The notes under the pieces: model-generated
Told to the model about the DNA's origin: nothing
The model's input: the letters and a program-made list of their open reading frames with translations, nothing else
Database searches by the model: none
Origin: Pristiophorus japonicus
Taxonomy: Eukaryota
Direction of reading: 5' to 3'
Assembly (NCBI RefSeq): GCF_044704955.1
Contig: NC_091979.1
Coordinates: 317,936,001-318,000,000 of the forward strand
DNA length: 64,000 bases
Part shown: positions 11,106-60,380 of the stretch, in pieces
Position numbering within the stretch: position 1 is the stretch's first letter
Layout of the letters: the number at the start of each line of letters is the position of its first letter
Translations under genes and position numbers: made by a program

Positions 11106-11606
11106 AGTGCTGACAATCAGATGCCCCTCACAACCAACAGTAATACAATAACTCATTGATAGTCTATATGTTACAAGCAGTAATAGGTGTAATGTCTCTC
11201 TATCCTACGTGTAACTAGCAGTAATACTTTAACCCACTGATACTCACCCTGAAACCATACCCAGAATCCCCCTGCACTGCACCAGGTGAGGTCAGGCTCC
11301 CCAGTTGAAGCCACATTTAACAGGCCCCATCTCTCTCTCTATCTCCTTGGAATCTGATTTGGTCTCCGGTTCCGTGTGAAGGTGACAATTCTGAACTGGG
11401 AACCTCAGTCTGAGCTGATCTGTATTTGGACTTCACACGTCAAACCCGGCCGGCACAGACCCACCTGAACCAATCCGAGAGATTGCGCAAAGGGCAGTGA
11501 GCTCAGTGTTTGGGGCACTTCTCACAGGGAACATTGTCCTAAACTCAGCTCAGCACCAACATTTCTAAACCATTCCATGTGTTCGGTCTCAATAAAGGAG
11601 GGTTTT

Positions 11607-11810
11607 CATAGAATTATAGAAATGACTACACAGGAGGAGACCATTCGGCCTCGGAGCTCGCACTCTCTTCTGTAATCCCATTCCCCCCAGATCTTATAAC
11701 ATTCTTCCTTTTCAAATATTTATCACGTTCCCTTTAGGTTTTAGAATCCTTGGTTTCTGTTCCATAGTTCCCCATTCGCCCACCACTGGAAATAATCTTT
11801 CACTATTTAC
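11607..11810 (-). mobile_element. Old CR1 3' fragment
   Basis: catagaa...acacaggaggagaccattcggcc is the reverse complement of a CR1 tail, followed by degenerate CR1 3' sequence. Confidence 0.6.
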
Positions 11811-11930: not shown

Positions 11931-12713
11931 ACCCCATTCCCCAGTCTCCCTCTCCCCGAGCCCCCATTCCCCAGTCTCTCTCTCCCCGAGCCCCCATTCC
12001 CCAGTCTCTATCTCCCCGAGCCCCCATTCCCAAGTCTCCCAGTCCCCAATCCCCCATTCCCCAGTCTCCCTCTCCCAGAGCCCCCATTCCCCAGTCTCCC
12101 TCTCTCCCCGAGCCCCCATTCCCCAGTCTCTCTCTCCACGAGGCCCCATTCCCAAGTCTCCCTCTCCCCAAGCCCTCATTCCCCAGTCTCCCGCTCCCCG
12201 AGCCCCCATTCCCCAGTCTCTCTCTCCCCGAGGCCCCATTCCCAAGTCTCCCTCTCCCCAAGCCCTCATTCCCCAGTCTCTCTCTCCCCGAGCCCCCATT
12301 CCCAAGTCTCCCAGTCCCCAAGCCCCCATTCGCCAGTCTCCCGCTCCCTGAGCCCCCATTCCCCAGTCACCGTCTCCCTGAACCCCCATTCCCCAGTCTC
12401 CCTCTCCCCAAGCTCCCATTCCTCAGTCTCCCACTCTCCCCAAGCCCCCATTCCCCAGTCTCCCTCGCCCGGAGCCCCCATTCCCAGTCTCCCTCTTCCC
12501 AAGCCCCCATTCCCCAGTCTCTCCCTCTCTCCCCGAGCCCCCATTCCCCAGTCTCCCTCTCCCCCACCCCCCATTCCCCAGTCTCCCTCTCCACGAGCCC
12601 CCATTCCCCAGTCTCCCTCTCCCTGAGCCCCCATTCCCCAGTCTCTCTCTCCCCAAGCCCCCATTCCCAGTCTCCCTCTCTCCCCCAGCCCCCATTCCCA
12701 GTCTCCCTCTCCT
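11931..12713. repeat. 30-bp minisatellite (CCCCCATTCCCCAGTCTCCCTCTCCCCGAG)n, ~26 copies
   Basis: Direct tandem periodicity. The same unit recurs at 16047-16530. Confidence 0.95.
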
Positions 12714-12721
12714 CCGGCCAC

Positions 12722-12788
12722 CATACATAGAATCATAGAATGGTTGCAGCACGGAAGACGACCATTTGGCCATCCAGCCCGTGCCGAA
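12722..12788 (-). mobile_element. CR1/HER1-type 3' terminus (stem-loop region plus ATTCTATG repeats)
   Basis: Minus strand reads CGGCACGGGCTGGATGGCCAAATGGTCGTCTTCCGTGCTGCAACCATTCTATGATTCTATG. Confidence 0.85.
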
Positions 12789-13037
12789 TTAGACATATCT
12801 CATTTACATTAAACACCAAAAGACCCAACTGGAGATTTCTATCCAATCACCAAAAAGAAAATATCCCCAAACCCACTCAATGATAGATACGTTACCGATT
12901 ACTATTAACACTGGCAGCAGCCAGTGACAATCAAACGAAATGAAGATGCAGAATCGTGGATTGCTTCTGAATGAACCCTCCTTGCGACACAGCAAGTCCA
13001 GATTCTAGTCCCAGTGAACTTCACTTCGGGACCAGCC

Positions 13038-14105
13038 TCAGGCTTGGGCTGGTGAGTTTGGGGATAATTCTCCTCGTTCAGCAGGGTTCGCTGGGCTGTA
13101 ACCAGATGTCTCCTCTCCTCCTCTCCTCTTCCACACAACCGCACCGATCACAATAGCAATCAGGGCGACGGCAGCAATCACAATTCCAACAATCAAACCC
13201 CTATTTGTTCCCTCTGGCGATCCTGGAGTCACTCGGAACGTCCCGTCCCAGTCTCGGGTCTTCCCTCCTGCTTGGCCGCTCTGCTCATACTGACAGGAAT
13301 AGGTGGCTCCATCCGCGGGCTCGATCTGAGCCCATGTCGTGAGCTGGTAGGTGCCATCGTGGTTGGGCAGGATGCCCGTGGATTCCGTGTCCCTGATTGG
13401 CTCGCCATTTCTCAGGAGGGTCACTTGGATTTCGCGAGGGTAAAAACCTGTGAGGAGACAGGAGAGTTGGGGGGCTTTAATATTCGACGCCTTGTCCACA
13501 GAAGGAAACACTTGAGGAGCAACAGCTCCCAGTTCTCTCTCTCCAGCCTTCAGGTATTTCTTCAGCCACTCGATGCACTCCTGCTCCAGGTAACTTTTGT
13601 CCTGCTGCATTTCGGCCCTGTCCTGGTCCCACTTGTTCTTGGTGATCTCTCCCCACGGTACCGGGGTGACCCACACCAGGCGATCCTTGTCGAAGCTGAT
13701 CAGGTCCTTCCCGTCCCAGCCGTACTGCCAGAAGCCGCTGGTGGTGCCGTCATCCCGCAGCTCACAGCCGCACAACCTCTGCAGCGTGTGGATCCCGCCG
13801 GTCTGGTTGGTGCGGGTTAAGACGGTCTGAATGTTGCCTTTCATCACCTGCTCCTTGCCCCGCAGGATCTGTGTGTAGCGCTCCCAGTACTCGGCGCCCT
13901 CGCTCTCCCTGATCCACCGCTGCCGCGGGGTGTACTGCCGGCTCACACTGTCATAGTAAATAAACTGCTGGTCATCCACATAACCCACATCGGTGAACTC
14001 AGCAATGCCCGGGAGCGGAGTGATAGCCGTGTGCATGTACCGCAGGGAGTGAGAGCCTGCACACACCTCTCCACACAGAAGGGCCAGCACGGTCAGTCCA
14101 AACAT
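13038..14105 (-). CDS. MHC class I heavy (alpha) chain, intact, single-exon, classical (UAA)-like
   Basis: 355-aa ORF: signal peptide; GSHSLRY alpha1 with NQT glycan site; alpha2 with CELRDDG...YGWDGKD...TKNKW...YLEQECIEWLKKY; alpha3 Ig-C1 with CLLTGFYP...PNHDGTYQL...YSC; TM GLIVGIVIAAVALIAIVIGAVVW; tail with GYSPA. No introns at any domain junction. Confidence 0.97.
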   Translation of the reverse strand: MFGLTVLALLCGEVCAGSHSLRYMHTAITPLPGIAEFTDVGYVDDQQFIYYDSVSRQYTPRQRWIRESEGAEYWERYTQILRGKEQVMKGNIQTVLTRTNQTGGIHTLQRLCGCELRDDGTTSGFWQYGWDGKDLISFDKDRLVWVTPVPWGEITKNKWDQDRAEMQQDKSYLEQECIEWLKKYLKAGERELGAVAPQVFPSVDKASNIKAPQLSCLLTGFYPREIQVTLLRNGEPIRDTESTGILPNHDGTYQLTTWAQIEPADGATYSCQYEQSGQAGGKTRDWDGTFRVTPGSPEGTNRGLIVGIVIAAVALIAIVIGAVVWKRRGGEETSGYSPANPAERGELSPNSPAQA

Positions 14106-14201
14106 TGTTACTTCCCTCGACAGGCTGGAATGAGCGGTTTGCAGGCAATCCTTTTCCGAGAGACCGTCCGTGAGCTGCGCCCAATTCAGACCGTGTGATT
14201 C

Positions 14202-15360
14202 CTGTGCCCTGTGCCGATACTGTGTCTCTGGGACTGTCTCTCTGTGCCCTGTGCTGATACTGTGTCTCTGGGACTGTCTCTCTGTGCCCAGTGCTGATAC
14301 TGTGTCTCTGGGACTGTCTCTCTGTGCCCAGTGCTGATACTGTGTCTCTGGGACTGTCTCTCTGTGCCCAGTGCTGATACTGTGTCTCTGGGACTGTCTC
14401 TCTGTGCCCAGTGCTGATACTGTGTCCCTGGGACTGTCTCTCTGTGCCCTGTGCTGATACTGTGTCTCTGGGACTGTCTCTCTGTGCCCTGTGCTGATAC
14501 TGTGTCCCTGGGACTGTCTCTCTGTGCCCAGTGCTGATACTGTGTCCCTGGGACTGTCTCTCTGTGCCCTGTGCTGATACTGTGTCTCTGGGACTGTCTC
14601 TCTGTGCCCTGTGCTGATACTGTGTCCCTGGGACTGTTTCTCTGTGCCCTGTGCCGATACTGTGTCTCTGGGACTGTCTCTCTGTGCCCAGTGCTGATAC
14701 TGTGTCTCTGGGACTGTCTCTGTGCCCTGTGCTGATACTGTGTCTCTGGGACTGTCTCTGTGCCCTGTGCTGATACTGTGTCTCTGAGACTGTCTCTCGG
14801 TGCCCTGTGCTGATACTGTGTCTCTGGGACTGTCTCTCTGTGCCCAGTGCTGATACTGTGTCCCTGGGACTGTCTCTCTGTGCCCTGTGCTGATACTGTG
14901 TCTCTGGGACTGTCTCTCTGTGCCCTGTGCTGATACTGTGTCTCTGGGACTGTCTCTCTGTGCCCTGTGCTGATACTGTGTCTCTGGGACTGTCTCTCTG
15001 TGCCCTGTGCTGATACTGTGTCTCTGGGACTGTCTCTCTGTGCCCTATGCTGATACTGTGTCTCCGGGACTGTCTTGGTGCCCTGTGCTGATACTGTGTC
15101 TCTGGGACTGTCTCTGTGCCCTGTGCTGATACTGTGTCTCTGGGACTGTCTCTCTGTGCCCTGTGCTGATACTGTGTCTCTGGGACTGTCTCGGTGCCCT
15201 GTGCTGATACTGTGTCTCTGGGACTGTCTCTGTGCCCTGTGCTGATACTGTGTCTCTGGGACTGTCTCTCTGTGCCCTGTGCTGATACTGTGTCTCTGGG
15301 ACTGTCTCGGTGCCCTGTGCTGATACTCTGTCTCTGGGACTGTCTCTGTGCCCTGTGCTG
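14202..15360. repeat. 40-bp (38-bp variant) VNTR between MHC-I promoter and ATG, ~29 copies
   Basis: Unit CTGTGCCCTGTGCTGATACTGTGTCTCTGGGACTGTCTCT, very homogeneous. Confidence 0.97.
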
Positions 15361-15545
15361 TCTGTTCTTGCGCTTTGCCCAGTGCAGAGTGTTTTACACT
15401 CAGACTCCTCCGGTTCGATTGGTTCGAGGGTATATTTGTCTCCAATTACAATAAAAACAGGCTGTGAGTCAATAGGCTCCGGGTAGAAAAGACACGGGGA
15501 GAGTTTGTGTTGGTGCCGAAATAAACTTTCCAAACATTGAACTAT

Positions 15546-15587
15546 CCAATCAGACAAATACTGCGAGCTGCATCATCAGTTGCCGGG
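15546..15587 (-). promoter_or_regulatory. MHC X1-X2-Y promoter module (RFX, CREB/ATF, NF-Y)
   Basis: Minus strand: X1 CCCGGCAACTGATG (15587-15574), overlapping X2-like TGATGCA, a 20-nt spacer, then Y box CTGATTGG (15553-15546). Oriented toward the MHC-I ORF. Nearby: AP-1 TGAGTCA (15465-15471), a second CCAAT (~15418-15422), TATA-like AAATATA (~15431-15437). Confidence 0.8.
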
Positions 15588-15714
15588 TAGGTTAAAGATA
15601 ATCCCCGCCTCTCCCGGTCCCGAGTTCTCCCACCACCCTCCAAACCCAACTTCCCGACTCCCAACCCCCCGAAAGCTCTGCCCACCCCCGGCAGCTCGAT
15701 CTCCTGAGGGGTTC

Positions 15715-15890
15715 AAGGGATCTGCTGCGAGGGGGCTGAAGGGATCTGCTGGGAGGGGGCTGAATGGATCTGTTCGGAGGGGGCTGAAGGGATCTGCTGG
15801 GAGGGGGCTGAAGGGATCGGCTGGGAGGGGGCTGAAGGGATCTGCAGGGAGGGGACTGAAAGAATCTGCTGGGAGGGGGCTGAAGGGAGT
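15715..15890. repeat. 24-bp minisatellite (GGGAGGGGGCTGAAGGGATCTGCT)n, ~7 copies
   Basis: Direct tandem periodicity. Confidence 0.9.
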
Positions 15891-16046
15891 TGCTGTGGTG
15901 TGTGAGAGAAGGCCAGGGCTGGAGAGGCCCAGTGACCTTGTCTGGAGCCCAGGGATCAGTCCAGCTCTTCCAGGCCCCCACAGAATAAATTACACTCAAC
16001 CTGGCCTCTTCTACCTCCCGCCTGGCCTCACCATGATCCCCCCTGA

Positions 16047-16530
16047 CCCATTCCCCAGTCTCTCTCTCCCGAGCCCCCATTCCCCCTCTCCCCGAGCCCG
16101 CATTCCCCAGTCTCCATCTCCCCGAGGCCCCATTCCCCAGTCTTCCTCTCCCCGAGCCCCCATTCCCCAATCTCTTTCTCCCTGAACCCCCATTCCCCAG
16201 TCTCCCTCTCCCCGAGCTCCCATTCCCCAGTCTCCCTCTCCCTGAGCCCCCATTCCCCAGTTTCCCTCTCCCCAAGCCTTCATTCCCCAGTCTCCCTCTC
16301 CCCGAGCCCCCATTCCCCAGTTTCCCTCTCCCCAAGCCCCCATTTCCCAGTCTCCCTCTCCCCGAGCCCCCATTCCCCAGTCTCCCTCTCCCCGAGCTCC
16401 CATTCCCCAGTCTCCCTCTCCCCAAGCCTCCATTCCCCATTCTCACTCTCCCCAAGCCCCCATTCCCCAGTCTCCCTCTCCCCGAGCCCCCATTCCCCAG
16501 TCTCCCATTCCCCGAGCCCTCTTTCCCCAG
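16047..16530. repeat. 30-bp minisatellite, second array (~16 copies)
   Basis: Same unit and orientation as 11931-12713. Confidence 0.95.
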
Positions 16531-16532
16531 TG

Positions 16533-16895: not shown

Positions 16896-18199
16896 GATCA
16901 TACTAATGGATGATCGTGGATTTCTGCTGGCACTCATGAGCCAATTGTTCATTTGTTGTTGCCTCCGGGACCATTACGGGATTCCAATGGGTTTCCCCCG
17001 AACTGAGGGATGCCAGGCAGTGAGGCTGCAGGGAGGTGTTCCGGGCCCATGTGCACTGACCTGCTCATCTGTTCTGCTATTCTGACTTTACCAGCATTGC
17101 TATGTTGATTATATATGAGCTAAAAATGTAAGTTAGATACACATAAGATGGGCTTTGATTATTTTGTTCTCTTACAGCAACACACTGAATGATTGCTTGA
17201 AAGCAAAACTTGGCCAGCTTCAATGTCACTTCACGTGGGGCCCACAGAGAGACAGCATTGACTTGGACGACATGAAGTATAGATTACAAGATTTAATACA
17301 GGCTCGTGTGAAATATCAGGCCAGGTCTGACAACCACCTCGCATTTGTAAACTGTCAGCAAGGCAATTCAAAGGGGCAATTCAAAACTTAAAGGAAGCTG
17401 AAAAGATTCTGAGGGAGAACCATGAACATTAATTTGAAAGAAGAAGCATCATCACCTATGGAAACTATGCCTGGGTATATTATCACATGGGCCAACTGAC
17501 AGAGGCCCAGTCCTACCTCGACAAGCTGGAGATGATCTGTAAATAATTTACTGATGGCTCTCAGTATACAGCACTGATACCTGAAGTATACGGGGAGAAG
17601 GGTTGGTCACTGTTGAATTCTCCTTGTCAATACTATGAAGAGGCAAAGGAATGTTTTGAGAAGACTCTGGAGGAAGATCCTGATGACACTGAATGGAACG
17701 TTGGCTATGCGACTGTTTTGTTCCGTCTGGAAGGGTTTTCTGGTACCCCAGAGAGTGGTGACTGCAGCCAATCAGTGAAGCAGTTGTGACGTGTGCTGGA
17801 ACTTGATCCAGATGACTCTGTAGCCATGTTGGCTCTAAAACTACAAGAGTTCAATCAAAAGGTGGAAGAACACGAATTAGTTGAACAAGCATTGCAGAAG
17901 TCCCCTGATCTTCCATATGTAACTCGTTATGCAGCAAAATTTTACAGAAGAGAAGGAGATGTGGAAAAAGCTGTGGAGCTGTTGAAGAAAGCATTAAAAA
18001 TTACTCCAAACTCTACCTTCATACACCACCAAATAGGTCAGTGTTGCAGAAAAAAAATATTTCAACTGATCAAATATCCAGGCAGCAAAGCCCCTCGCAA
18101 TCCTGCTTTTCAACAGAAAGCTGAGTTGATCAATCAATGCAAGTACTATTTTGAAAAGGCATTTGAGCAGAAGCCATCATTTATTTTTGCACAATTGCA

Positions 18200-20810
18200 A
18201 ATCTACAACGCAGAAGGAGGCCATTTCGGCCCATCGTGTCCACACCGGCCGACAAAGAAACATACGGCCCTCAGTCAGCAGCCCTGAAAGTTACATATAA
18301 ACGTATGAACAATGAACAATGGCAGAAAGGTAAAGAGCACCCAGCCCAACCAGTCTGCCCCACACAACTGCGACACCCCTTGCACCGAAACATTCTACAC
18401 TCCTCCCCAACCGGAGCCATGTGATCTCCAGGGAAAGGCAAAAAACAGATAAAAACCCAGGTCAATTGGGGAAAAAATATCTCGGAACATTCCTCTCCAA
18501 CCCATCCAGGTAATCGAAACTCGTCCAGGAGATCACCCTGGATATATTCGATTTGCTGCAGTACTTACCATCATAGCTGTGCCTGCCAACAACAGGTTAT
18601 CCAGTCTAATCCCACTTACCAGCTTTAGGTCCATGTAACCCTGCAGATTATGGCACTTCAAGTGTCCATCCAAGCACCTTTTAAATGTGTTGAGGGTTTC
18701 TACATCCACCACCCTTCCAGGCCCTAAGTTCCAGACCCCCACAACCCTCTGCTTGAAAAAGCCACCCCTCAAATCCCCTCTGAACCTTCCACCAACCACC
18801 TTAAAACTATGCCCCCTCATAATTGAACCCACCACCAAGGGAAATAGGTCCTTGCTATCCACTATATCCAGACCCCTCAAAATTTTGGACACCTCAATGA
18901 GGTCTCCTCTCAACATCCTCTGTTCCAATGAGAACAAACACAGCCTATCCAATGATGTGGTATATTTGGACTTTCAGAAGGCTTTCGACAAGGTCCCACA
19001 CAAGAGATTAATGTGCAAAGTTAAAGCACATGGGATTGGGGGTAGTGTGCTGACGTGGATTGAGAACTGGTTGTCAGACAGGAAGCAAAGAGTAGGAGTA
19101 AATGGGTACTTTTCAGAATGGCAGGCAGTGACTAGTGGGGTACCACAAGGTTCTGTGCTGGGGCCCCAGCTGTTTACATTGTACATTAATGATTTAGATG
19201 AGGGGATTAAATGTAGTATCTCCAAATTTGCGGATGACACTAAGTTGGGTGGCAGTGTGAGCTGCGAGGAGGATGCTATGAGGCTGCAGAGTGACTTGGA
19301 TAGGTTAGGTGAGTGGGCAAATGAATGGCAGATGAAGTATAATGTGGATAAATGTGAGGTTATCCACTTTGGTGGTAAAAACAGAGAGACAGACTATTAT
19401 CTGAATGGTGTCAGATTAGTAAAAGGGAAGGTGCAACGAGACCTGGGTGTCATGGTACATCAGTCATTGAAGGTTGGCATGCAGGTACAGCAGGCGGTTA
19501 AGAAAGCAAATGGCATGTTGGCCTTCATAGCGAGGGGATTTGAGTACAGGGGCTGGGAGGTGTTGCTACAGTTGTACAGGGCCTTGGTGAGGCCACACCT
19601 GGAGTATTGTGTACAGTTTTGGTCTCCTAACTTGAGGAAGGACATTCTTGCTATTGAGAGAGTGCAGCGAAGATTCACCAGACTGATTCCCGGGATGGTG
19701 GGACTGACCTATCAAGAAAGACTGGATCAACTGGGCTTGTATTCACTGGAGTTCAGAAGAATGAGAGGGGACCTCATAGAAACGTTTAAAATTCTGACGG
19801 GTTTAGACAGGTTAGATGCAGGAAGAATGTTCCCAATGTTGGGGAAGTCACAGTCTAAGGATAAGGGGTAAGCCATTTAGGACCGAGATGAGGAGAAACT
19901 TCTTCACCCAGAGAGTGGTGAACCTGTGGAATTCTCTACCACAGAAAGTAGTTGAGGCCAATTCACTAAATATATTCAAAAGGGAGTTAGATGAAGTCCT
20001 TACTACTCGGGGGATCAAGGGGTATGGCGAGAAAGCAGGAAGGGGGTACTGAAGTTTCATGTTCAGCCATGAACTGATTGAATGATGGTGCAGGCGAGAA
20101 GGGCTGAATGGCCTGATCCTGCATCTATTTTCTATGTTTCTATGTTTCTATCCTCATAGCTAAGTTTCTCCATTCCAGGCAGCATCCTAGCAAATGTCCT
20201 CTGCACCCTCTCTATTGCAATCACGTCCTTTCTATAATATGGCGACCAGAACTGCACGCAGTACTCCAGCTGTGGCCTAACCAAAGTATTATACATTTTA
20301 AGCATAACCTCCCTGCTCTTGTATTATGTGCCTCAGCCAAGAAAGGCAACCATTCCGTATGCCTTCTTCACCACCTTATCCACCTGGCCTGCTACTTTCA
20401 GGGATCTGTGGACAAGCACTCCAAGATCCCTTTATTCATCTACACTTTTACCGGTTAATGTGTATACCCTTTCCTTATTAGCCCTCTCAAAGTGCATTAC
20501 CTCATACTTATCCAAATTAAATTCCATTTGCCACTGCTCTGCCCACCTGACCATTAGATTGATATCCTCCTGCAGTCCATGACTTTCTGCTTCATTAACG
20601 ACCACACAGCCAATTTTGGTGTCACCTGCAAACTTCTTAATCATACTCCCGATAATCAAATCTAGATCATTGATGTATACCACAAAAAGCAAGGAACCCA
20701 GTACTGAGCCCTGCGGACCCCACTGGAAACATCCTTCCAGTCACAAAAACATCCATTTACCATTACCCTTTGCTTCTTACCGCTGAACCAATTTTGGATC
20801 CAACTAGCAT
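18200..20810 (-). mobile_element. Older CR1 with long 3' UTR, interrupted by a younger CR1
   Basis: RT C-terminus in ORF 18533-18952, continuing at 20151-20810 (YINDLD...KFAGDTK). Confidence 0.9.
18952..20150 (+). mobile_element. Young 5'-truncated CR1
   Basis: DVVYLDFQKAFDKVPH, GVPQGSVLGP and FADDTK motifs, plus a TTTCTATG tail. Confidence 0.95.
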
Positions 20811-34887: not shown

Positions 34888-36264
34888 GGGCCTAAGTTTC
34901 CACACACGCCTAGAACGGCGCAGTCCCGACCTGGACGCCCGTTTTTCGCGCCACAAAGTGCGCCTAAAAAAATCCTCGGTATTCTCTACCTCCCTGCAGG
35001 TCCTCTGGCCCTCGCGCAGCGCAGCACGAGCTGTGGGGGGGCGGAGCCAGGTCCCTGCGCTGAAAACAGTGCCGGGACCTCTGCACATGCGCGCTATAGT
35101 GGGCACGCAAGTGCAGTAGCTCCAGGCGCCCGAAGCAAGCATCCCCTAGCCCTGGCCGAATGGCCTCACTGGGTCTGCGTGAATAAGGCTCCTCCCCCGG
35201 CCAGCTCCTGCTTCCCCCCCCCCCCCCCCCGCGACCAGACCCGGCACCCGCTCTCCCCCCCGCCCCCCGACCGGACCCGACCCGATCCGACCCGCGCTCC
35301 TGTTCCCCCCCACCCCCGACTGGACCCGACCCGACCCGACTCCCGCCCCCCAACCTGACCCCCCCCACCCTCCGACTGGACCCCCCCCGACTCGACTCCC
35401 ACCCCCCCCCCCAACCCGACCGGACTCCCGCTTCCGCTCCCGCTCCGCCCCCCGCCGACTGGACCCGACCCGCGCTCCTGCTCCCGCTCCCCGCCCCCCC
35501 ACCCCGACTCGACCCGACCCGATCTGACACGACTCGACTCCCGCTCCCCCCCCCGCCCCCAGACTGGATCCGACCTGACCTCCCCCTCCCCGACCTGACC
35601 TCTNNNNNNNNNNNNNNNNNNNNNNNNNNNNNNNNNNNNNNNNNNNNNNNNNNNNNNNNNNNNNNNNNNNNNNNNNNNNNNNNNNNNNNNNNNNNNNNNN
35701 NNNNNNNNNNNNNNNNNNNNNNNNNNNNNNNNNNNNNNNNNNNNNNNNNNNNNNNNNNNNNNNNNNNNNNNNNNNNNNNNNNNNNNNNNNNNNNNNNNNN
35801 NNNNNNNNNNNNNNNNTCTCTCTCACCCTCCCCCCTCTCTCTCCCCCCCTCCCCCACTCTCTCTCTCTCCCTCCCCCCCTCTCTCTCCCTCCCTCCCTAC
35901 CCCCCCTCTCTCTCCCTCCCTCCCCCCCCCGCTCTCTCTCCCTCCCTCCCTCCCCCCGACCCGACCCGAACCGAACCTCCCCGACCCGACCCAACGCCAC
36001 CTACCTGTAAATCTGGTGCTGGGGACGTGCCCTGCCCGAAGTCTCGGGCCGGCCCGTTCAGCCTTCGGTCCCGAAAGGCCTGCCTGAAGCACTTTCACAC
36101 AGGTAGGAAGATGGTTTATTTAATCTTTTCTTTGCTTATAAATGTTTATTCAGGTTGGATTTATTTGTTTAATATTTGTATAAGTATAAATAAAGATTTA
36201 TTATAGAATTTAATGACTTCCCTTCCCTCCCCCTCCCCCCCCCACCTCGTTCTGGACGCCTAAT
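34888..36264. mobile_element. GC-rich non-autonomous element with (CCGAC)n low-complexity core
   Basis: GGGCCTAAGTTTCC terminus-like start, CpG-rich. Spans the assembly gap. Confidence 0.45.
35604..35816. other. Assembly gap (213 N)
   Basis: Run of N. Confidence 1.
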
Positions 36265-40508: not shown

Positions 40509-43500
40509 GTCAGTGAGTGACACGGTCCCCAGGACAGCGACCCATGTCACAAGTAGTGTCAGTGAGTGACACGGTGCCCAGGACAGTGACCCATGTCACA
40601 AGTAGTGTCAGTGAGTGACACGGTGCCCAGGACAGTGACCCATGTCACAAGTAGTGTCAGTGAGTGACACGGTGCCCAGGACAGTGACCCATGTCACAAG
40701 TAGTGTCAGTGAGTGACACGGTGCCCAGGACAGCAACCCATGTCACAAGTAGTGTCAGTGAGTGACACGGTGCCCAGGACAGTGACCCATGTCACAAGTA
40801 GTGTCAGTGAGTGACACGGTGCCCAGGACAGTGACCCATGTCACAAGTAGTGTCAGTGAGTGACACGGTGCCCAGGACAGTGACCCATGTCACAAGTAGT
40901 GTCAGTGAGTGACACGGTGCCCAGGACAGCGACCCATGTCACAAGTAGTGTCAGTGAGTGACACGGTGCCCAGGACAGCGACCCATGTCACATAGAAACA
41001 TAGAAACATAGAAAATAGGTGCAGGAGTAGGCCATTCGGCCCTTCTAGCCTGCACCACCATTCAATGAGTTCATGGCTGAACATTCAACTTCAGTACCCC
41101 ATTCCTGCTTTCTCGCCATACCCCTTGATCCCCCTAGTAGTAAGGACCTCATCTAACTCCTTTTTGAATATATTTAGTGAATTGGCCTCAACAACTTTCT
41201 GTGGTAGAGAATTCCACAGGTTCACCACTCTCTGGGTGAAGAAGTTCCTCCGCATCTCGGTCCTAAATGGCTTACCCCTTATCCTTAGACTATGACCTCT
41301 GGTTCTGGACTTCCCCAACATTTGGAACATTCTTCCTGCATCTAACCTGTCTAACCCCGTCAGAATTTTAAATGTTTCTATGAGGTCCCCTCTCATTCTT
41401 CTGAACTCCAGTGAATACAAGCCCAGTTGATCCAGTCTTTCTTGATAGGTCAGTCCCGCCATCCCGGGAATCAGTCTGGTGAACCTTCGCTGCACTCCCT
41501 CAATAGCAAGAATGTCCTTCCTCAGGTTAGGAGACCAAAACTGTACACAATACTCCAGGTGTGGCCTCACTAATGCCCTGTACAACTGTAGCAACACCTC
41601 CCTGCCCCTGTACTCAAATCCCCTTGCTATGAAGGTCAACATGCCATTTGCTTTCTTAACCGCCTGCTGTACCTGCATGCCAACCTTCAATGACTGATGT
41701 ACCATGACACCCAGGTCTCTTTGCACCTCCCCTTTTCCTAATCTGTCACCATTCAGATAATAGTCTGTCTCTCTGTTTTTACCACCAAAGTGGATAACCT
41801 CACATTTATCCACATTATACTTCATCTGCCATGCATTTGCCCACTCACCTAACCTATCCAAGTCGCTCTGCAGCCTCACAGCATCCTCCTCGCAGCTCAC
41901 ACTGCCACCCAACTTAGTGTCATCCGCAAATTTGGAGATACTACATTTAATCCCCTCATTTAAATCATTAATGTACAGTGTAAACAGCTGGGGCCCCAGC
42001 ACAAAACCTTGCGGTACCCCACTAGTCACTGCCTGCCATTCTGAAAAGTACCCATTTACTCCTACTCTTTGCTTCCTGTCTGACAACCAGTTCTCAATCC
42101 ATGTCAGCACACTACCCCCAATCCCATGTGCTCTAACTTTGCACATCAATCTCTTGTGTGGGACCTTGTCGAAAGCCTTCTGAAAGTCCATATATACCAC
42201 ATCAACTGGTTCTCCCTTGTCCACTCTACTGGAAACATCCTCAAAAAATTCCAGAAGATTTGTCAAGCATGATTTCCCTTTCACAAATCCATGCTGACTT
42301 GCACCTATCATGTCACCTCTTTCCAAATGCACTGCTATGACATCCTTAATAATTGATTCCATCATTTTACCCACTACCAATGTCAGGCTGACCGGTCTAT
42401 AATTCCCTGTTTTCTCTCTCCCTCCTTTTTTAAAAAGTGGGGTTACATTGGCTACCCTCCACTCTATAGGAACTGATCCAGAGTCAATGGAATGTTGGAA
42501 AATGACTGTCAATGCATCCACTATTTCCAAGGCCACCTCCTTAAGTACTCTGGGATGCAGTCCATCAGGCCCTGGGGATTTATCGGCCTTCAATCCCATC
42601 AATTTCCCCAACACAATTTCCCGGCTAATAAGGATTTCCCTCAGTTCCTCCTCCTTACTAGACCCCCCGACCCCTTTTATAACCGGAAGGTTGTTTGTGT
42701 CCTCCTTCATGAATACCGAACCAAAGTACTTGTTCAATTGGTCCGCCATTTCTTTGTTCCCCGTTATGACTTCCCCTGATTCTGACTGCAGGGGACCTAC
42801 GTTTGTCTTTACTAACCTTTTTCTCTTTACATATCCATAGAAACTTTTGCAATCCGTCTTAATGTTCCCTGCAAGTTTCTTTTCATACTCCATTTTCCCT
42901 GCCCTAATCAAACCCTCTGCTAAGTTCTAAATTTCTCCCAGTCCCCAGATTCGCTGCTATTTCTGGCCAATTTGTATGCCACTTCCTTGGCTTTAATACT
43001 ATCCCTGATTTCCCTTGATAGCCACGGTTGAGCCACCTTCCCTTTTTTATTTTTATGCCAGACAGGAATGTACAATTGTTGTAGTTCATCCATTCGGTCT
43101 CTAAATGTCTGCCATTGCCCATCCACAGTCAACCCCTTAAGTATCATTCGCCAATCCATCCCAGCCAATTCACGCCTCATACCTTCAAAGTTAGCCTTCT
43201 TTAAGTTCTGGACCATGGTCTCTGAATTAACTGTTTCATTCTCCATCCTAATGCAGAATTCCACCATATTATGGTCACTCTTCCCCAAGGGGCCTCGCAC
43301 AACAAGATTGCTAATTAATCCTCACTCATTACATAACACCCAGTCTAAGATGGCCTCTCCCCTAGTTGGTTCCTCGACATATTGGTCTAAAAAACCATCC
43401 CAAGTATTGTCATTGAGTGACACGGTGCCCAGGACAGTGACCCATGTCACAAGTAGTGTCAGTGAGTGACACGATGCCCAGGACAGTGACCCATGTCACA

Positions 43501-44138
43501 AGTAGTGTCAGTGAGTGACACGGTGCCCAGGACAGTGACCCATGTCACAAGTAGTGTCAGTGAGTGACACGGTGCCCAGGACAGTGACCCATGTCACAAG
43601 TAGTGTCAGTGAGTGACACGGTGCCCAGGACAGCAACCCATGTCACAAGTAGTGTCAGTGAGTGACACGGTGCCCAGGACAGTGACCCATGTCACAAGTA
43701 GTGTCAGTGAGTGACACGGTGCCCAGGACAGTGACCCATGTCACAAGTAGTGTCAGTGAGTGACACGGTGCCCAGGACAGTGACCCATGTCACAAGTAGT
43801 GTCAGTGAGTGACACGGTGCCCAGGACAGCGACCCATGTCACAAGTAGTGTCAGTGAGTGACACGGTGCCCAGGACAGCGACCCATGTCACAAGTAGTGT
43901 CAGTGAGTGACACGGTGCCCAGGACAGTGACCCATGTCACAAGTAGTGTCAGTGAGTGACACGGTGCCCAGGACAGTGACCCATGTCACAAGTAGTGTCA
44001 GTGAGTGACACGGTGCCCAGGACAGTGACCCATGTCACAAGTAATGTCAGTGAGTGACACGGTGCCCAGGACAGCGACCCATGTCACAAGTAGTGTCAGT
44101 GAGTGACACGGTGCCCAGGACAGTGACCCATGTCACAA
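40509..44138. repeat. 49-bp minisatellite (~25 copies) split by a CR1
   Basis: Unit AGTAGTGTCAGTGAGTGACACGGTGCCCAGGACAGTGACCCATGTCACA in arrays 40509-40992 and 43401-44138. Confidence 0.95.
40991..43400 (-). mobile_element. Young CR1, 5'-truncated, with open RT domain
   Basis: ORF 41091-42911 (606 aa) has all RT motifs. The upstream piece 42920-43300 is offset by a small deletion. Confidence 0.97.
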
Positions 44139-44636
44139 GAACGACATGACTCGGTTCTGAGGGTGAGTATATTTTACATTAACCTGACCATGCCACGCTC
44201 TGAGCTCAATGTGCAGTCTCTCCTCAATGTGAATGTGTCTGACCCCATGCTCTATGTGGGTGAGACCAGATACAAGGTTCCCATTTGCAGCCTCACCCAC
44301 TCCAAGGCCTGTATACACAATTAACCTTCCTACTCCCTTGTGGAGACCCACCCCTCATCCTGTTACCTCCTCAGTCTTCAGATGTATCTGGAAGATGCTA
44401 ACCTCACAGTAACTGTTAGGTCCTGGCTCCACTTCATTCAAGCATTGCCACAAGTACTCGGAGCTAATGGAAGTTACATCAAACTTTACAGAGTCTCAGA
44501 CACGAACATGTTCTGAACTATGTAAGGCACTTCAAACAGACAGATAGAAGGGCACGAATTATGACGTTCTTTTTAATCTTGCAGGCCAAGTTTGCACAGA
44601 TTGGAAGAGACCAGATGCAGAACGGAGGAGGGGATA

Positions 44637-47600
44637 TAACATAAGAATTAGGAACAGGAGTAGGCCATCTAGCCCCTCGAGCCTGCTCCGCCATTCAACA
44701 AGATCATGGCTGATCTGGCCGTGGACTCAGCTCCACTTACCCGCCCGCTCCCCGTAACCCTTAATTCCCTTATTGGTTAAAAATCTATCTATCTGTGATT
44801 TGAATACATTCAATGAGGTAGCCTCAACTGCTTCCTTGGGCAGAGAATTCCACAGATTCACAACCCTCTGGGAGAAGATATTCCTTCTCAACTCGGTTTT
44901 AAATTGGCTCCCCCGTATTTTGAGGCTGTGCCCCATAGTTCTCGTCTCCCCGACCAGTGGAAACAACCTCTCTGCCTCTATCTTGTCTATCCCTTTCATG
45001 ATTTTAAATGTTTCTATAAGATCACCCCTCATCCTTCTGAACTCCAACCAGTAAAGACCCAGTCTACTCAATCTATCATCATAAGGTAACCCCCTCATCT
45101 CTGGAATCAGCCTAGTGAATCGTCTCTGTACCCCCTCCAAAGCTAATATATCCTTCCTTAAGTAAGGTGATCAAAAATGCACGCAGTACTCCAGGTGCGG
45201 CCTCACCAATAGCCTGTACAGTTGCAGCAGGACCTCCCTGCTTTTGTACTCCATCCCTCTCGCAATGAAGGCCAACATTCCATTCGCCTTCCTGATTACC
45301 TGCTGCACCTGCAAACTAACTTTTTGGGATTCATGCACAAGGACCTCCAGGTCCCTCTGCACCGCAGCATGTTGTAATTTTTCCCCATTCAAATAATATT
45401 CCCTTTTACTGTTTTTTTTTCCAAGGTGGATGACCTTACATTTTCCGACATTGTATTCCATCTGCCAAACCTTAGCCCATTCGCTTAGCCTATCTAAATC
45501 TCTTTGCAGCCTCTCTGTGTCCTCTACACAACCCGCTTTCCCACTAATCATTGTGTCATCTGCAAATTTTGTTACACTACACTCTATCCCCTCTTCCAGG
45601 TCATCTATGTATATTGTAAACAGTTGTGGTCCCAGCACCGATCCCTGTGGCAAACCACTAACCACCGATTTCCAACCCGAAAAGGACCCAGTTATCCCGA
45701 CTCTCTGCTTTCTGCTCGCCAGCCAATTCTCGATCCATGCTAATACATTTCCTCTGACTCCGCGTACCTTTATTTTCTGCAGTAACCTTTTATGTGGCAC
45801 CTTATTGAATGCCTTTTGGAAATCTAAATATACCACATCCATCGGTATACCTCTATCCACCATGCTCGTTATATCCTCAAAGAATTTCAGGAAATTAATT
45901 AAAGATGATTTCCCCTTCATGAATCCATGTTGCGTCTGCTTGATTGCACTATTCCTATCTAGATGTCCCGCTATTTCTTCCTCAATGATAGTTTCAAGTA
46001 TTTTCCCCACTACAGATGTTAAACTAACCGGCCTATAGTTACCTGCCTTTTGCCTGCCCCCTTTTTTAAACAGAGGTGTAACATTAGCTGCTTTCCATTC
46101 CACTGATACCTCCCCAGAGTCCAGAGAATTTTGGTAGATTATAACGAATGCATCTGCTATAACTTCCGTCATCTCTTTTAATACCCTGGGATGCATTTCA
46201 TCAGGACCAGGGGACTTGTCTACCTTGAGTCCCATTAGCCTGTCCAGCACTACCCTCCTAGTGATAGAGATTGTCTCAAGGTCCTCCCTTCCCACATTCC
46301 TGTGACCAGCAATTTTTGGCATGGTTTTTGTGTCTTCCACTGTGAAGACCGAAGCAAAATAATTAGAAACATAGAAAACATAGAAACATAGAAAATAGGT
46401 GCAGGAGTAGGCCATTCGGCCCTTCTAGCCTGCACCGCCATTCAATGAGTTCATGGCTGAACATTCAACTTCAGTACCCCATTCCTGCTTTCTCACCATA
46501 CCCCTTGATTCCCCTAGTAGTAAGGACCTCATCTAACTCCTTTTTGAATATATTTAGTGAATTGGCCTCAACAACTTTCTGTGGTAGAGAATTCCACAGG
46601 TTCACCACTCTCTGGGTGAAGAAATTCCTCCTCATCTCGGTCCTAAATGGCTTCCCCCTTATCCTTAGACTGTGTCCCCTGGTTCTGGACTTCCCCAACA
46701 TTGGGAACATTCTTCCTGCATCTAACCTGTCTAACCCCGTCAGAATTTTAAACGTTTCTATGAGGTCCCCTCTTATTCTTCTGAACTCCAGTGAATACAA
46801 GCCCAGTTGATCCAGTCTTTCTTGATAGGTCAGTCCCGCCATCCCGGGAATCAGTCTGGTGAACCTTCGCTGCACTCCCTCAATAGCAAGAATGTCCTTC
46901 CTCAGGTTAGGAGACCAAAACTGTACACAATACTTCAGGTTTAAGGTCTCAGCCATTTCCACATTTCCCATTATTAAATCCTCCTTCTCATCTTCTAAGG
47001 GACCAACATTTACTTTAGTCACTCGTTTCCGTTTTATATATCTGTAAAAGCTTTTACTATCTGTTTTTATGTTTTGCGCAAATTTACTTTCGTAATCTAT
47101 CTTTCCTTTATTTATTGCCTTCTTCGTCATTCTTTGCTGTTGTTTAAAATTTTCCCAATCTTCTAGTTTCCCACTAACCTTGGCCACCTTATATGCATTG
47201 GTTTTTAATTTGATACTCTCCTTTATTTCCTTGGTTATCCATGGCTGGTTATCCCTTCTCTTACCACCCTTCTTTTTCACTGGAATATATTTTTGTTGAG
47301 CACTATGAAAGAGCTCCTTAAAAGTCCTCCATTGTTCCTCAATTGTGCCACCGTTTAGTCTGTGTTTCCAGTCTACTTTAGCCAACTCTGCCCTCATCCC
47401 ACTGTAGTCCCCTTTGTTTAAGCATAGTACACTCGTTTGAGCCACTACTTCCTCACCCTCAATCTGTATTACCAATTCAACCATACTGTGATCACTCATT
47501 CCAAGAGGATTTTTTACGAGGAGATCGTTTATTATTCCTGTCTCATTGCACAGGACCAGATCTAAGATCGCTTGCTTCCTTGTAGGTTCTGTAACATACT

Positions 47601-48580
47601 GTTCTAAGAAACAATCCCGTATGCATTCTATGAATTCTTCCTCAAAGCTTCCCCGTGCAATTTGATTTGACCAATCGATATGTAGGTTAAAATCCCCCAT
47701 GATTACTGCCGTTCCTTTTTCACATGCCTCCATTATTCCCTTGATTATTGTCTGCCCCACCATGAAGTTATTATTTGGGGGCCTATAAACTACGCCCACC
47801 AGTGACTTTTTCCCCTTACTATCTCTAATCTCCACCCACAATGAATCAACATTTTGTTCATTGGAGCCAATATCGTCTCTCACAACTACCCTGATTTCAT
47901 CTTTTATTAACAGAGCTACCCCACCTCCTTTCCCTTCTTGTCTATCTTTCCGAATTGTCAGATACCCCTGTATGTTTAATTCCCATTCTTGGCCACCCTG
48001 CAAACACGTTTCTGCAATGGCCACCAAATCATACCCATTTGTCATGATTTGTGCCGTCAACTCATTTACTTTATTTCGAATGCTGTGTGCGTTTAGGTAG
48101 AGTGTTTTACTACTAGTTCTTAAACCATGATTTTTAGTTTTGACCCCTCCTGCAGCCCCTTTATATTCATACATATTGTCCCTTCCTATCACCTTGTGGT
48201 TTACACTTACCCCAGTGCTACTCTGCTCTGTTGCCTCCTGTCTTTTGCATTCTTTCTTGGGATCCTGTTCATCTGAGCTCTCACACATTCTAACTAGCTC
48301 AGAGCCCTCTCCTGTGTTCCGAATACTCCTCGCATTGAGGCACTGAGCTTTCATGCTTGCCTTTTTATTACACTTTGACCCTTTAGAATTTTGCTGTACA
48401 GTGGCCCTTTTTGTTTTTTGCCTTGGGTTTCTCTGCCCTCCACTTTTACTCATCTCCTTTCTGTCCTTTGCTTTTGTCTCCTTTTTGTTTCTCTCTGTCT
48501 CCCTGCATTGGTTCCCATCCCCCTGCCATATTAGTTTAAGTCCTCCCCAACAGCACTAGCAGACACTCCCCCTCGGACGT
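44637..48580 (-). mobile_element. Long CR1 (ORF1 end, EN, RT) interrupted by a younger CR1
   Basis: EN in ORF 46471-48453 (GDFN, SDH), RT in ORF 45171-46415, and a CR1 tail at ~44640. Confidence 0.93.
46366..46938 (-). mobile_element. Young CR1 3' fragment nested in the older CR1
   Basis: Near-identical to 40995-41555; it splits the host peptide ETLN/NYFA. Confidence 0.93.
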
Positions 48581-57413: not shown

Positions 57414-57780
57414 ACCACACCAGCACATTCTCAGCATTGCTGGCTGTGCAGCTGCCTCACAAGGAGAAGCACAACAAGGAGAGGGAGTTGGAGGTCTGAA
57501 GCAGGTGTGCTGATGGCACATCCACCTCAGTCGGGTGGTCAGGGTGATTGAATACTTCAACAAATGCTACATACCACCATCTGTACCACAAGCTTCACAC
57601 ACTGCCCAAAGGACCAGACTCCTAGCACTTACCAACCAACAATCTCCACCTACTAACACTCACACCCACATCTCACGCCTTGCAGACAATGACAGCTATT
57701 TAACTATGGCAGGCACAAGGGTCATTAGTTATTCGAATGAATGTGATATGTGTGATATGTTTACGCGCAAATTTATTAAT

Positions 57781-58713
57781 GATGACACTAAGTTGGGTGG
57801 CAGTGTGAGCTGCGAGGAGGATGCTATTAGGCTGCAGAGTGACTTGGATAGGTTAGGTGAGTGGGCAAATGCATGGCAGATGAAGTATAATGTGGATAAA
57901 TGTGAGGTTATCCACTTTGGTGGTAAAAACAGAGAGACAGACTATTATCTGAATGGTGACAGATTAGGAAAAGGGAAGGTGCAACGAGACCTGGGTGTCA
58001 TGGTACATCAGTCATTGAAGGTTAGCATGCAGGTACAGCAGGCGGTTAAGAAAGCAAATGGCATGTTGGCCTTCATAGCGAGGGGATTTGAATACAGGGG
58101 CAGGGAGGTGTTGCTACAGTTGTACAGGGCCTTGGTGAGGCCACACCTGGAGTATTGTGTACAGTTTTGGTCTCCTAACTTGAGGAAGGACATTCTTGCT
58201 ATTGAGGGAGTGCAGCGAAGATTCAGCAGACTGATTCCCGGGATGGTGGGACTGACCTATCAAGAAAGACTGGATCAACTGGGCTTGTATTCACTGGAGT
58301 TCAGAAGAATGAGAGGGGACCTCATGGAAACGTTTAAAATTCTGACGGGTTTAGACAGGTTAGATGCAGGAAGAATGTTCCCAATGTTGGGGAAGCCCAG
58401 AACCAGGGGTCACAGTCTGAGGATAAGGGGTAAGCCATTTAGGACCGAGATGAGGAGAAACTTCTTCACCCAGAGAGTGGTGAACCTGTGGAATTCTCTA
58501 CCACAGAAAGTAGTTGAGGCCAATTCACTAAATATATTGAAAAGGGAGTTAGATGAAGTCCTTACTACTCGGGGGATCAAGGGTTATGGCGAGAAAGCAG
58601 GAAGGGGTACTGAAGTTTCATGTTCAGCCATGAACTCATTGAATGGCGGTGCAGGCTAGAAGGGCTGAATGGCCTGCTCCTGCACCTATTTCCTATGTTT
58701 CTATGTTTCTATG
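57781..58713 (+). mobile_element. Young 5'-truncated CR1
   Basis: Runs from DDTKLGG through the C-terminus and tail; nearly identical to 19233-20150. Confidence 0.96.
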
Positions 58714-60300: not shown

Positions 60301-60380
60301 AGAGGTTTTATACAATAAATTCTCTTTCTTTTTTTTGTTATTTCAGAAGAATTAATTGATCTGGGGGCCAATTTTAATGA

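What the first reader, a model, noticed from the sequence alone, without database searches (positions are those of the whole stretch)
13038..14105. Fully intronless, intact MHC class I gene with classical features
Seen: leader, alpha1, alpha2, alpha3, TM and cytoplasmic tail all lie in one uninterrupted 355-aa ORF. By HLA numbering, anchors Y7, Y59, R84, T143, K146, W147, Y159 and Y171 are kept and only position 123 differs (L). The N86 glycan site, both disulfides, W167 and the tail tyrosine are retained. Known: class I genes normally have about 7-8 exons, one per domain. Inference: a functional retrogene, or an intron-stripped locus derived from the classical UAA lineage, that could present peptide. 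Every other protein-coding region nearby is decayed or transposon-derived.
Basis: partly seen in the sequence, partly recalled or inferred. Interest (0 to 1): 0.85.

Follow-up and report, generated by a model that had tools for sequence, protein, structure and literature searches.

The report
Intronless shark MHC class I retrogene copy
A Japanese sawshark carries an intact antigen-presenting (MHC class I) gene with no introns in its coding part. It was pasted, promoter included, into a satellite next to an interferon-induced IFIT gene and then duplicated, and it looks able to work, but nothing shows that this particular copy is used.

Summary
A 355-aa ORF on the minus strand (13038-14105) encodes a complete MHC class I heavy chain with every classical anchor.

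- **Species and family:** the species is Pristiophorus japonicus. The ORF is one of at least 6 annotated proteins that are about 99% identical. The scan has already met sibling copies on other DNA of this genome.
- **Insertion:** the gene sits in a 3.3-kb block (16046->12726). The block ends exactly at a CR1 terminal octamer repeat and interrupts a 30-bp satellite without breaking its phase, with about 5 bp duplicated. That marks a CR1-type retro-insertion.
- **Promoter:** the block also carries an MHC-type X-Y promoter module.
- **Duplication:** a sibling's annotated 5' exon is found 100% identical outside the block (16974-16904). The copies therefore spread by DNA duplication, together with a head-to-head IFIT gene that is decayed in this window.
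- **Relatives:** the nearest relative is the highly expressed P0005, at 74% identity.
- **Constraint:** only 2 of 78 conserved columns are changed, which indicates long purifying selection.
- **Expression:** contigs from runs that look like RNA show family transcripts at low depth. They carry the majority letters, not this copy's private ones.

Function is plausible but not shown. The closest precedent is the processed L-lineage class I genes of teleosts. I found no shark report.

The parts
13038..14105 (-). Complete class I coding sequence in one exon: leader 14105-14058, alpha1 14057-13797, alpha2 13796-13521, alpha3 13520-13242, connecting peptide/TM/cytoplasmic tail 13241-13041, stop 13040-13038
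12726..13037 (-). 3'UTR (312 nt) with no poly(A) tract after it. It is homologous (84% over 12770-12934) to the 3'UTR of the abundant P0005 mRNA
12726..12787 (-). CR1-like 3' tail ending in two perfect octamers, ATTCTATG ATTCTATG. In the DNA run, 98 contigs of this high-copy repeat all diverge exactly at 12726, the repeat's canonical 3' terminus
   Evidence: octamer hallmark in PMC2612034
14106..14201 (-). 5' leader. An AG acceptor at 14126-14125 means a spliced exon would start at 14124. An RNA-like contig also reads through unspliced up to 14175
14202..15360 (.). 40-bp satellite (29 copies, 95% alike) between the promoter-like segment and the leader. It lies inside the inserted block, and contigs of it occur in the RNA-like runs
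15546..15583 (-). MHC-type X-Y module: GCAACTGATG-ATGCAGC-13 nt-CTGATTGG, with 20 bp between the X core and the Y box (inverted CCAAT)
   Evidence: 1 match, 0 in 100 shuffles; the pattern was chosen after seeing the sequence; spacing rule and H2-D X core in PMC4374748
15361..16046 (-). 5' part of the inserted block: unique sequence plus a 24-bp repeat (15708-15895). There is no other copy in the window
12726..16046 (-). The whole 3321-bp inserted block
   Evidence: the satellite phase is continuous across it
16047..16531 (.). 30-bp satellite, upstream half of the target array. It ends at phase 9 (..GGGGAATGGG), with ATGG at 16051-16048
11932..12725 (.). 30-bp satellite, downstream half of the target array. 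It restarts at phase 4/5 (tATGGtGGCc), with ATGG at 12724-12721, a putative duplication of about 5 bp
16904..16974 (-). Candidate upstream exon outside the block: ATG at 16974, 23 codons 100% identical to the N-terminus of sibling protein P0124, then TA|GT with the donor at 16903-16902. There is a TATA-like TATATAA at 17115-17109
17155..18287 (+). Decayed IFIT-like gene, head-to-head with the class I gene: ORF pieces in two frames, an in-frame stop at 17790-17792, then cut by a LINE

Best explanation
This is one copy of a young multi-copy family of a retro-inserted, promoter-carrying MHC class I gene of classical type. Shown: a 3.3-kb block (upstream region with an MHC-type X-Y module, a 40-bp satellite, the leader, the intron-free coding sequence and the 3'UTR) ends exactly at a CR1 terminal repeat and sits inside a 30-bp satellite whose phase runs on across it. 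Inferred: a class I transcript that began upstream of its own promoter, had its coding introns spliced out and ended in a CR1-derived 3'UTR tail was reverse-transcribed and inserted by CR1 machinery beside an IFIT gene. Shown: the abundant relative P0005 also has that CR1-derived tail in its mRNA. Shown for one sibling, inferred for the rest: the class I/IFIT module was then duplicated at the DNA level. The duplication gave at least 6 annotated copies that are about 99% identical, lying 1.1-1.3 Mb apart on this chromosome. Inferred from sequence: the protein can pair with beta2-microglobulin and hold peptides by their termini. Its lineage evolved under purifying selection. The family is transcribed at a low level compared with P0005. 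This copy's own use is not shown, and its neighbouring IFIT gene is dead.
For: An intact ORF with all the classical anchors is present. The CR1 octamers lie at the exact end, where 98 repeat contigs diverge at 12726, and there is no poly(A). The satellite phase is continuous, with about 5 bp duplicated. The P0005 mRNA shares the 3'UTR and runs into the same CR1 tail. An X-Y module with 20-bp spacing is present. Six proteins are about 99% identical. The P0124 5' exon is 100% identical at 16974-16906, outside the block, although the body of P0124 differs from this ORF at 4 residues. The donor and acceptor are in place. An IFIT-like gene lies head-to-head. Only 2 of 78 conserved columns are changed, against 2-4 in presumed working genes and 5-13 in divergent ones. 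The family's stem branch is 0.26, against 0.18 for P0005 and Squalus. In the two RNA-like runs, near-identical contigs cover 12729-13866 and 13984-14175. The family-to-satellite depth ratio there is about 1, against about 1:60-100 in the DNA run, so this is not DNA carry-over.
Against: An RNA that includes its own promoter is unusual for a retrocopy. The 5' end of the block has no independent mark of being RNA-derived. The kind of runs X5 and X6 is not on record; I infer RNA from their depth pattern. The RNA contigs carry the majority letters at 14043, 13154, 12775 and 12794, not this copy's. Spliced mRNA from an unseen intron-containing twin would look the same. The selection signal cannot be split into the time before and the time after intron loss. 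Among the young copies, the 8 known amino-acid differences fit neutrality as well as constraint. The rough dN/dS of about 0.4 against P0005 rests on 22 codons. I could not read the sibling loci, so the duplication unit is inferred from one protein model.
Confidence: 0.6

Rival explanations
1. This is a young, still-intact processed pseudogene family. It was retro-inserted and duplicated so recently that no disabling mutation has had time to occur. The transcripts are noise from a carried-along promoter or from the neighbouring IFIT promoter.
For: The copies differ by only about 0.3% (5 private letters in 1477 bp), so intactness of all of them is expected by chance. The 8 amino-acid differences among 6 proteins fit neutrality. 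Family depth is about 100- to 1000-fold below P0005. The partner IFIT gene in this window is dead. Summed DNA depth rises toward the 3' end, as expected if many truncated dead copies exist.
Against: The family is 26% diverged from its nearest known relative, yet only 2 of 78 conserved columns are changed. Nearly all of that divergence therefore happened under constraint. For this to be a pseudogene family, a near-identical intron-containing parent must exist or have been lost very recently. None appears among the annotated proteins, and the 961-nt DNA contig is not broken at the exon junctions.
Confidence: 0.3
2. Each copy is an independent CR1-mediated insertion. On this view the class I gene with its CR1 tail behaves as a non-autonomous retroelement.
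For: The block has element-like ends. Summed DNA depth rises toward the 3' end, as for 5'-truncated copies. Other notes of the scan list truncated class I retrocopies on other pieces of the genome (not checked here).
Against: A sibling locus shares an exon 860 bp beyond the block's 5' end, on the far side of the satellite. Another sibling is also described as head-to-head with IFIT (not checked here). Both fit DNA duplication of a larger module.
Confidence: 0.1
3. The introns were lost in place. A genomic duplicate with its own promoter recombined with a cDNA, and no retro-insertion was involved.
For: The MHC-type X-Y module lies upstream of the coding sequence, which a normal mRNA would not carry.
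Against: The block ends at the exact CR1 terminus and splits a satellite in phase with a short duplication. That marks an insertion of the whole unit, promoter included.
Confidence: 0.07
4. The gene is an assembly artefact or cDNA contamination.
For: None found.
Against: DNA contigs run from the coding sequence into the 40-bp satellite. There are several annotated copies. The junctions with flanking repeats are clean.
Confidence: 0.01

Closest known systems
Processed L-lineage MHC class I genes of salmonids (Dijkstra et al. 2007, as summarised in Grimholt et al. 2015, PMC4364491)
   Same: These are class I genes that lack the introns between alpha1, alpha2 and alpha3. They are thought to come from retrotransposition of (partly) spliced mRNA. 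They are multi-copy, expressed, and in some cases induced by interferon or viral stimuli (PMC6797598 and PMC11695323, titles and abstracts).
   Different: L-lineage genes have two exons and are non-classical, without the peptide N- and C-terminal anchor residues. The sawshark gene has its whole coding sequence in one exon and keeps every anchor. It is in a cartilaginous fish, ends in a CR1 tail, and carries an MHC-type promoter module.
Squalomorph classical-type class I genes: P. japonicus P0005, Squalus acanthias Q8HWH7, Heptranchias perlo P0007
   Same: They fall in the same strongly supported clade, have the same length (351-355 aa), and share the same anchors and tail motifs. P0005 shares the 3'UTR and the CR1 tail.
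   Different: Protein identity is 68-74%. The alpha1 domain is the most diverged, at 54-64%. P0005 is about 100- to 1000-fold more abundant in the RNA-like runs.
Nurse shark Gici-UAA*01 (PDB 6LUP)
   Same: It is the best solved-structure match (E 5e-94), with the same peptide-terminus anchors.
   Different: It is 58% identical and lies in a different clade of the shark class I tree.
Retrogenes that inherit a parental promoter, and CR1-dependent retrocopies (Suh 2015, cited in PMC5381603; not read here)
   Same: A spliced gene copy is inserted by LINE machinery. Because CR1 reverse transcriptase needs its own 3' end, an mRNA with a CR1 tail is a suitable template.
   Different: I know these cases from general knowledge only. 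None that I know of concerns an MHC gene.

Membership tests
MHC class I heavy chain | alpha1-alpha2 groove domain plus a C1-set alpha3 domain, TM and tail | tested here: met
   Pfam MHC_I 8e-53 and C1-set 1e-14; 6LUP 5e-94
Classical-type (peptide-presenting) class I | Conserved peptide-terminus anchors Y7, Y59, Y/R84, T143, K146, W147, Y159, Y171 | tested here: met
   All 8 are present; the list comes from PMC4364491
Classical-type (peptide-presenting) class I | High, broad expression | tested here: not met
   Family contigs have depth 6-50, against about 900 to 100000 for P0005, in two RNA-like runs. Depth is a poor measure, and the tissues are unknown
Classical-type (peptide-presenting) class I | High allelic polymorphism concentrated in the groove | not testable with these tools
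   Only one animal's reads were available. The copies differ at 8 scattered residues
Classical-type (peptide-presenting) class I | Linkage to TAP/PSMB8 in the MHC-Ia region (elasmobranch rule, PMC10751288) | not tested
   There are no MHC framework genes in the 64 kb, and the neighbour is IFIT-like. Chromosome-scale position relative to the MHC is unknown
Processed retrogene (LINE-mediated) | Absence of the parental introns | tested here: met
   One ORF; DNA contig across the junction positions. That relatives have introns is general knowledge, not read here
Processed retrogene (LINE-mediated) | 3' end defined by the LINE's recognition tail or poly(A), plus a target-site duplication | tested here: met
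   CR1 octamers at the exact end; about 5 bp duplicated and the satellite phase continuous. The duplication is short and lies within a repeat, so it is weak on its own
Processed retrogene (LINE-mediated) | Lacks the parental promoter | tested here: not met
   An X-Y module with MHC-I spacing lies inside the block. The template must have started upstream of the promoter
Teleost L lineage | Non-classical groove without peptide anchors; teleost-specific clade | tested here: not met
   The anchors are kept, and the sequence falls among shark sequences. It is analogous in origin, not a member

The most novel reading that the evidence does not exclude
An elasmobranch has a working, classical-type MHC class I family outside the MHC proper. 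It was created by CR1-mediated retro-insertion of a promoter-carrying transcript into an IFIT locus and amplified together with it. As a result, peptide presentation by these copies is wired head-to-head to interferon-induced genes. That would be an exception to the reported rule that all elasmobranch class I genes lie in the MHC (PMC10751288).
Probability: 0.25. Interest if true: 0.8.

Novelty: new variant of a known kind. Interest (0 to 1): 0.6.

Why it matters
Class I genes are a textbook case of one exon per domain and, in sharks and rays, of strict residence in the MHC. An intact, constrained, transcribed, intron-free classical-type class I family sitting in an interferon-gene cluster would have three implications.

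- Retroposition could seed new antigen-presenting loci early in jawed-vertebrate history, as proposed for the teleost L lineage.
- It would give a natural test of whether a class I gene can work away from TAP and the immunoproteasome genes.
- It would show how an mRNA can be copied by CR1, a LINE that is normally too selective to make retrogenes, simply by having a CR1 tail in its 3'UTR.

If the copies are dead, it is still a clean example of that mechanism.

Tried and rejected
- I could therefore not read the DNA of the sibling loci, of P0005 or of other sharks' genes, and could not run a proper dN/dS or compare exon structures.
- **Not held:** the key shark papers by Almeida et al. are not held.
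- **Paper searches:** searches for intronless or processed class I genes in sharks, and for any MHC work on P. japonicus, found nothing relevant.
- **Window searches:** tblastn of the ORF against the window found no second class I piece.
- **ISRE:** a strict ISRE pattern has no match near the gene; its 2 matches are at 36.5 and 53.5 kb, at chance level. Interferon control is therefore only a guess from position.
- **Bacterial scan:** the bacterial promoter/terminator scan does not apply to a vertebrate, and I ignored it.
- **Copy number:** depth in read laying is not a copy number. The estimate of about 9-10 copies (depth 59 against 4-7 for diverged single pieces) is only a hint.
- **Organism B:** a run labelled as another organism holds near-identical pieces (303 nt with 1 difference). 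Its identity is coded, so it dates nothing.
- **Steps I left out:** no structure or complex was predicted. Sequence homology already fixes the fold, and no sawshark beta2-microglobulin was at hand.
- **Handling of restricted sequence:** The N run at 35604-35816 was left alone.

Full report
**1. Observation**

The window holds a 355-aa ORF on the minus strand at 13038-14105. Pfam reports MHC_I (17-192, E 8e-53) and C1-set (199-275, E 1e-14). The best solved structure is 6LUP, at E 5e-94, which is nurse shark Gici-UAA*01 (PMC8236899).

- Peptide-terminus anchors: Y23, Y73, R98, T155, K158, W159, Y172 and Y184. These correspond to HLA Y7, Y59, R84, T143, K146, W147, Y159 and Y171. Grimholt et al. 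give this set as the conserved anchors and note that R84 is usual in sharks (PMC4364491).
- Other conserved features: the N100-Q-T glycosylation site, both disulfide pairs, W180 and the tail tyrosine.
- Position 123: L135 is common in cartilaginous fish, where the residue is F in 25, L in 12 and Y in 9 of 52 sequences.

A 961-nt DNA contig of a public run lies unbroken on 13285-14245. It crosses three domain-junction positions and enters the upstream satellite. The intron-free state is therefore in the reads and is not an assembly artefact. That run is probably from the animal that was assembled.

**2. Species and family**

The closest database protein, P0001, is 99% identical and comes from Pristiophorus japonicus. 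Its 90% cluster has six distinct proteins, one of them this window's own. They differ from each other at 1-4 residues.

The scan's earlier notes list sibling intact copies 1.32 Mb before this window and 1.12 and 1.33 Mb after it, plus fragments elsewhere. So the scan found this before on other DNA of the same genome. I treated those notes as leads.

The next relatives are:

| Protein | Species | Identity |
|---|---|---|
| P0005 | same species | 74% |
| Q8HWH7 | Squalus acanthias | 72% |
| P0007 | Heptranchias perlo | 68% |

**3. Anatomy, read in gene sense (minus strand)**

1. 30-bp satellite, 16531->16047.
2. Unique sequence with a 24-bp repeat, 16046->15361.
3. 40-bp satellite, 15360->14202, 29 copies.
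4. 96-nt leader.
5. Coding sequence.
6. 312-nt 3'UTR whose last ~62 nt are a CR1-like tail. The tail ends in ATTCTATG ATTCTATG at 12726.
7. The same 30-bp satellite again, 12725->11932.

Two perfect ATTCTRTG octamers are the known terminal repeat of CR1 elements (PMC2612034). In the DNA run, 98 contigs of this high-copy repeat diverge at exactly 12726. That position is therefore the repeat's canonical 3' end. No poly(A) follows.

The upstream satellite stops at phase 9 of its unit (..GGGGAATGGG). The downstream one resumes at phase 4/5 (tATGGtGGC). The array is thus continuous across the block, with about 5 bp (ATGG-) duplicated.

Together these features mark a clean insertion of 3321 bp (16046->12726), primed at a CR1 tail.

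**4. The tail belonged to the mRNA**

A very abundant diverged contig in runs X5 and X6 is the P0005 mRNA. All 12 amino-acid replacements predicted from its listed differences match P0005. It is 87% identical over 13027-13415 and 84% over the 3'UTR, and its loose end continues into the same CR1 tail.

So the CR1 fragment was already in the 3'UTR before the two lineages split. This explains how a selective LINE such as CR1 could copy this mRNA.

**5. The block carries a promoter**

At 15583->15546 lies GCAACTGATG-ATGCAGC-13 nt-CTGATTGG. This occurs once in the window and never in 100 shuffles. I chose the pattern after seeing the sequence, so this is a lead and not a test.

- The X core resembles the H2-D sequence ACTGATGAC.
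- The 20-bp X-Y distance fits the 20-22 bp reported for MHC-I SXY modules (PMC4374748).

A normal mRNA would not contain its promoter. The template must therefore have started further upstream. This is the least secure step of the model. Intron loss in place by cDNA conversion would explain the promoter, but it would not explain the insertion marks.

**6. How the copies spread**

Sibling protein P0124 has a 30-aa N-terminal extension.
- Its first 23 residues are encoded 100% identically in this window at 16974->16906. That is 860 bp beyond the block, on the far side of the satellite.
- They are followed by TA|GT, with the donor at 16903-16902.
- The acceptor AG at 14126-14125 gives TA+C = Tyr and then LSREVT-M, exactly as in P0124.
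- The body of P0124 differs from this ORF at four residues, so it is another locus.

The duplicated unit therefore extends beyond the block, which means DNA duplication after one insertion.

Just beyond that exon, head-to-head, lies an IFIT-like gene:
- It has the ..LQCHFTW.. motif.
- It matches IFIT5 at 2.5e-30 and IFIT1 at 4e-29.
- In this window it is broken by a frame change and an in-frame stop at 17790-17792.
- It is then cut by a LINE.

**7. Relationships and constraint**

In a 59-row tree and a careful 30-row tree, the family sits in a fully supported clade with P0005, Squalus and Heptranchias, plus several divergent galeomorph genes. Nurse shark, horn shark and Triakis UAA lie elsewhere.
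- Family + P0005 has support 91/77.
- P0005 + Squalus is not rejected (p-AU 0.45).
- The family is therefore about as old as the sawshark/dogfish split, or nearly so.

Domain identities form a mosaic:

| Domain | to P0005 | to Squalus |
|---|---|---|
| alpha3 | 84% | 73% |
| tail | 73% | 86% |

The stem branch of the family is 0.26, against 0.18 for P0005 and for Squalus.

At 78 ectodomain columns that are at least 90% conserved in 51 other cartilaginous-fish class I sequences, departures are as follows:

| Sequence | Columns changed |
|---|---|
| this protein (F24M, P35A) | 2 |
| P0005 | 4 |
| Squalus | 2 |
| Heptranchias | 2 |
| nurse shark UAA | 3 |
| divergent genes | 5-13 |

Nearly all of the family's 26% divergence therefore accrued under purifying selection.

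A rough count on the listed differences from P0005 gives 10 synonymous and 12 non-synonymous codons, a dN/dS of about 0.4 for both branches together. It is a subset, so this is weak.

None of this says whether the constraint continued after the introns were lost. No near-identical intron-containing parent shows up among the annotated proteins or as a break in the DNA contig.

**8. Expression**

The kind of runs X5 and X6 is not on record. They are small, and their depths range from 0 to 1e5 on one gene, so they are almost surely RNA.
- In X5, near-identical contigs cover 12729-13288, 13275-13589 and 13581-13866, at depth 35-50.
- In X6, they cover 12842-13019 and 13984-14175, at depth about 7.
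- P0005 has depth 2e4-1e5 in X5 and about 900 in X6.
- In X5 the flanking satellites are no deeper than the gene, whereas in the DNA run they are 60-100 times deeper. DNA carry-over is therefore excluded.

The contigs carry the majority letters. This copy's private letters are not seen (14043 C; 13154 T, which gives I318; 12775 C; 12794 C; 12822 G). Contigs drop rare variants, so this copy's expression is neither shown nor excluded.

One contig reads through the acceptor to 14175, so unspliced leaders exist.

**9. Comparison with what is known**

The nearest precedent is the salmonid L lineage. These are two-exon class I genes without introns between the three ectodomains, and they are ascribed to retrotransposition of partly spliced mRNA. 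They are non-classical and lack the peptide anchors (PMC4364491).

Veríssimo et al. found no elasmobranch MHC-Ia or MHC-Ib genes outside the MHC in the species they studied (PMC10751288). Whether this IFIT-side locus is outside the sawshark MHC was not tested.

I found no paper on intron-free shark class I genes or on the MHC of this species. The proteins are in public annotation under a generic name.

**10. Verdict**

The new details are the CR1-tail mechanism, the carried promoter module, the 5' exon and the IFIT partner. Function is plausible (about 0.4-0.5 for the family) but open, and this copy is not singled out by any evidence.

It is a new variant of a known kind, and of clear interest to comparative immunologists.

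Noticed in passing
window 17155-18287 (+): Decayed IFIT-like gene with the hallmark ..LQCHFTW.. motif; it matches IFIT5 at 2.5e-30. Its ORF pieces lie in two frames, with an in-frame stop at 17790-17792, and it is cut at about 18.3 kb by a LINE with an RT ORF (18687-19871). It lies head-to-head with the class I gene.
   Followed up: partly
window 41091-48453 (-): LINE ORFs: endonuclease (46471-48453) and two reverse-transcriptase ORFs (45171-46415, 41091-42911). I did not check whether they belong to the CR1 family whose tail ends the class I block.
   Followed up: no
window 11600-11650 (-): A second, more diverged CR1-like 3' end (ggccgaatggtc...catttctataattctatg) just beyond the downstream satellite. 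It shows that such tails are common here.
   Followed up: no
window 12974-13243 (read depth): In the DNA run, the summed contig depth of class I-like pieces rises about 5- to 10-fold toward the 3' end of the gene (TM, tail, 3'UTR). This would be expected if the genome holds many 5'-truncated or diverged retrocopies. Depth is not a copy number.
   Followed up: partly
window 13059-13207 and 13496-13798 (run X7): A 2021 run labelled as a different organism holds pieces with 3 differences in 149 nt and 1 in 303 nt. The identity of that organism is coded, so it could be a related sawshark or a mislabel.
   Followed up: no
window 14202-15360: The 40-bp satellite inside the block contains no ATG in its consensus unit and appears in the RNA-like runs at about the same depth as the gene. 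It may be part of a very long 5'UTR or of a 2.8-kb intron.
   Followed up: no
window 55500-62100: Long overlapping ORFs on both strands, without Pfam hits, in G+C-rich, CpG-poor sequence. These are probably more satellite or low-complexity DNA.
   Followed up: no
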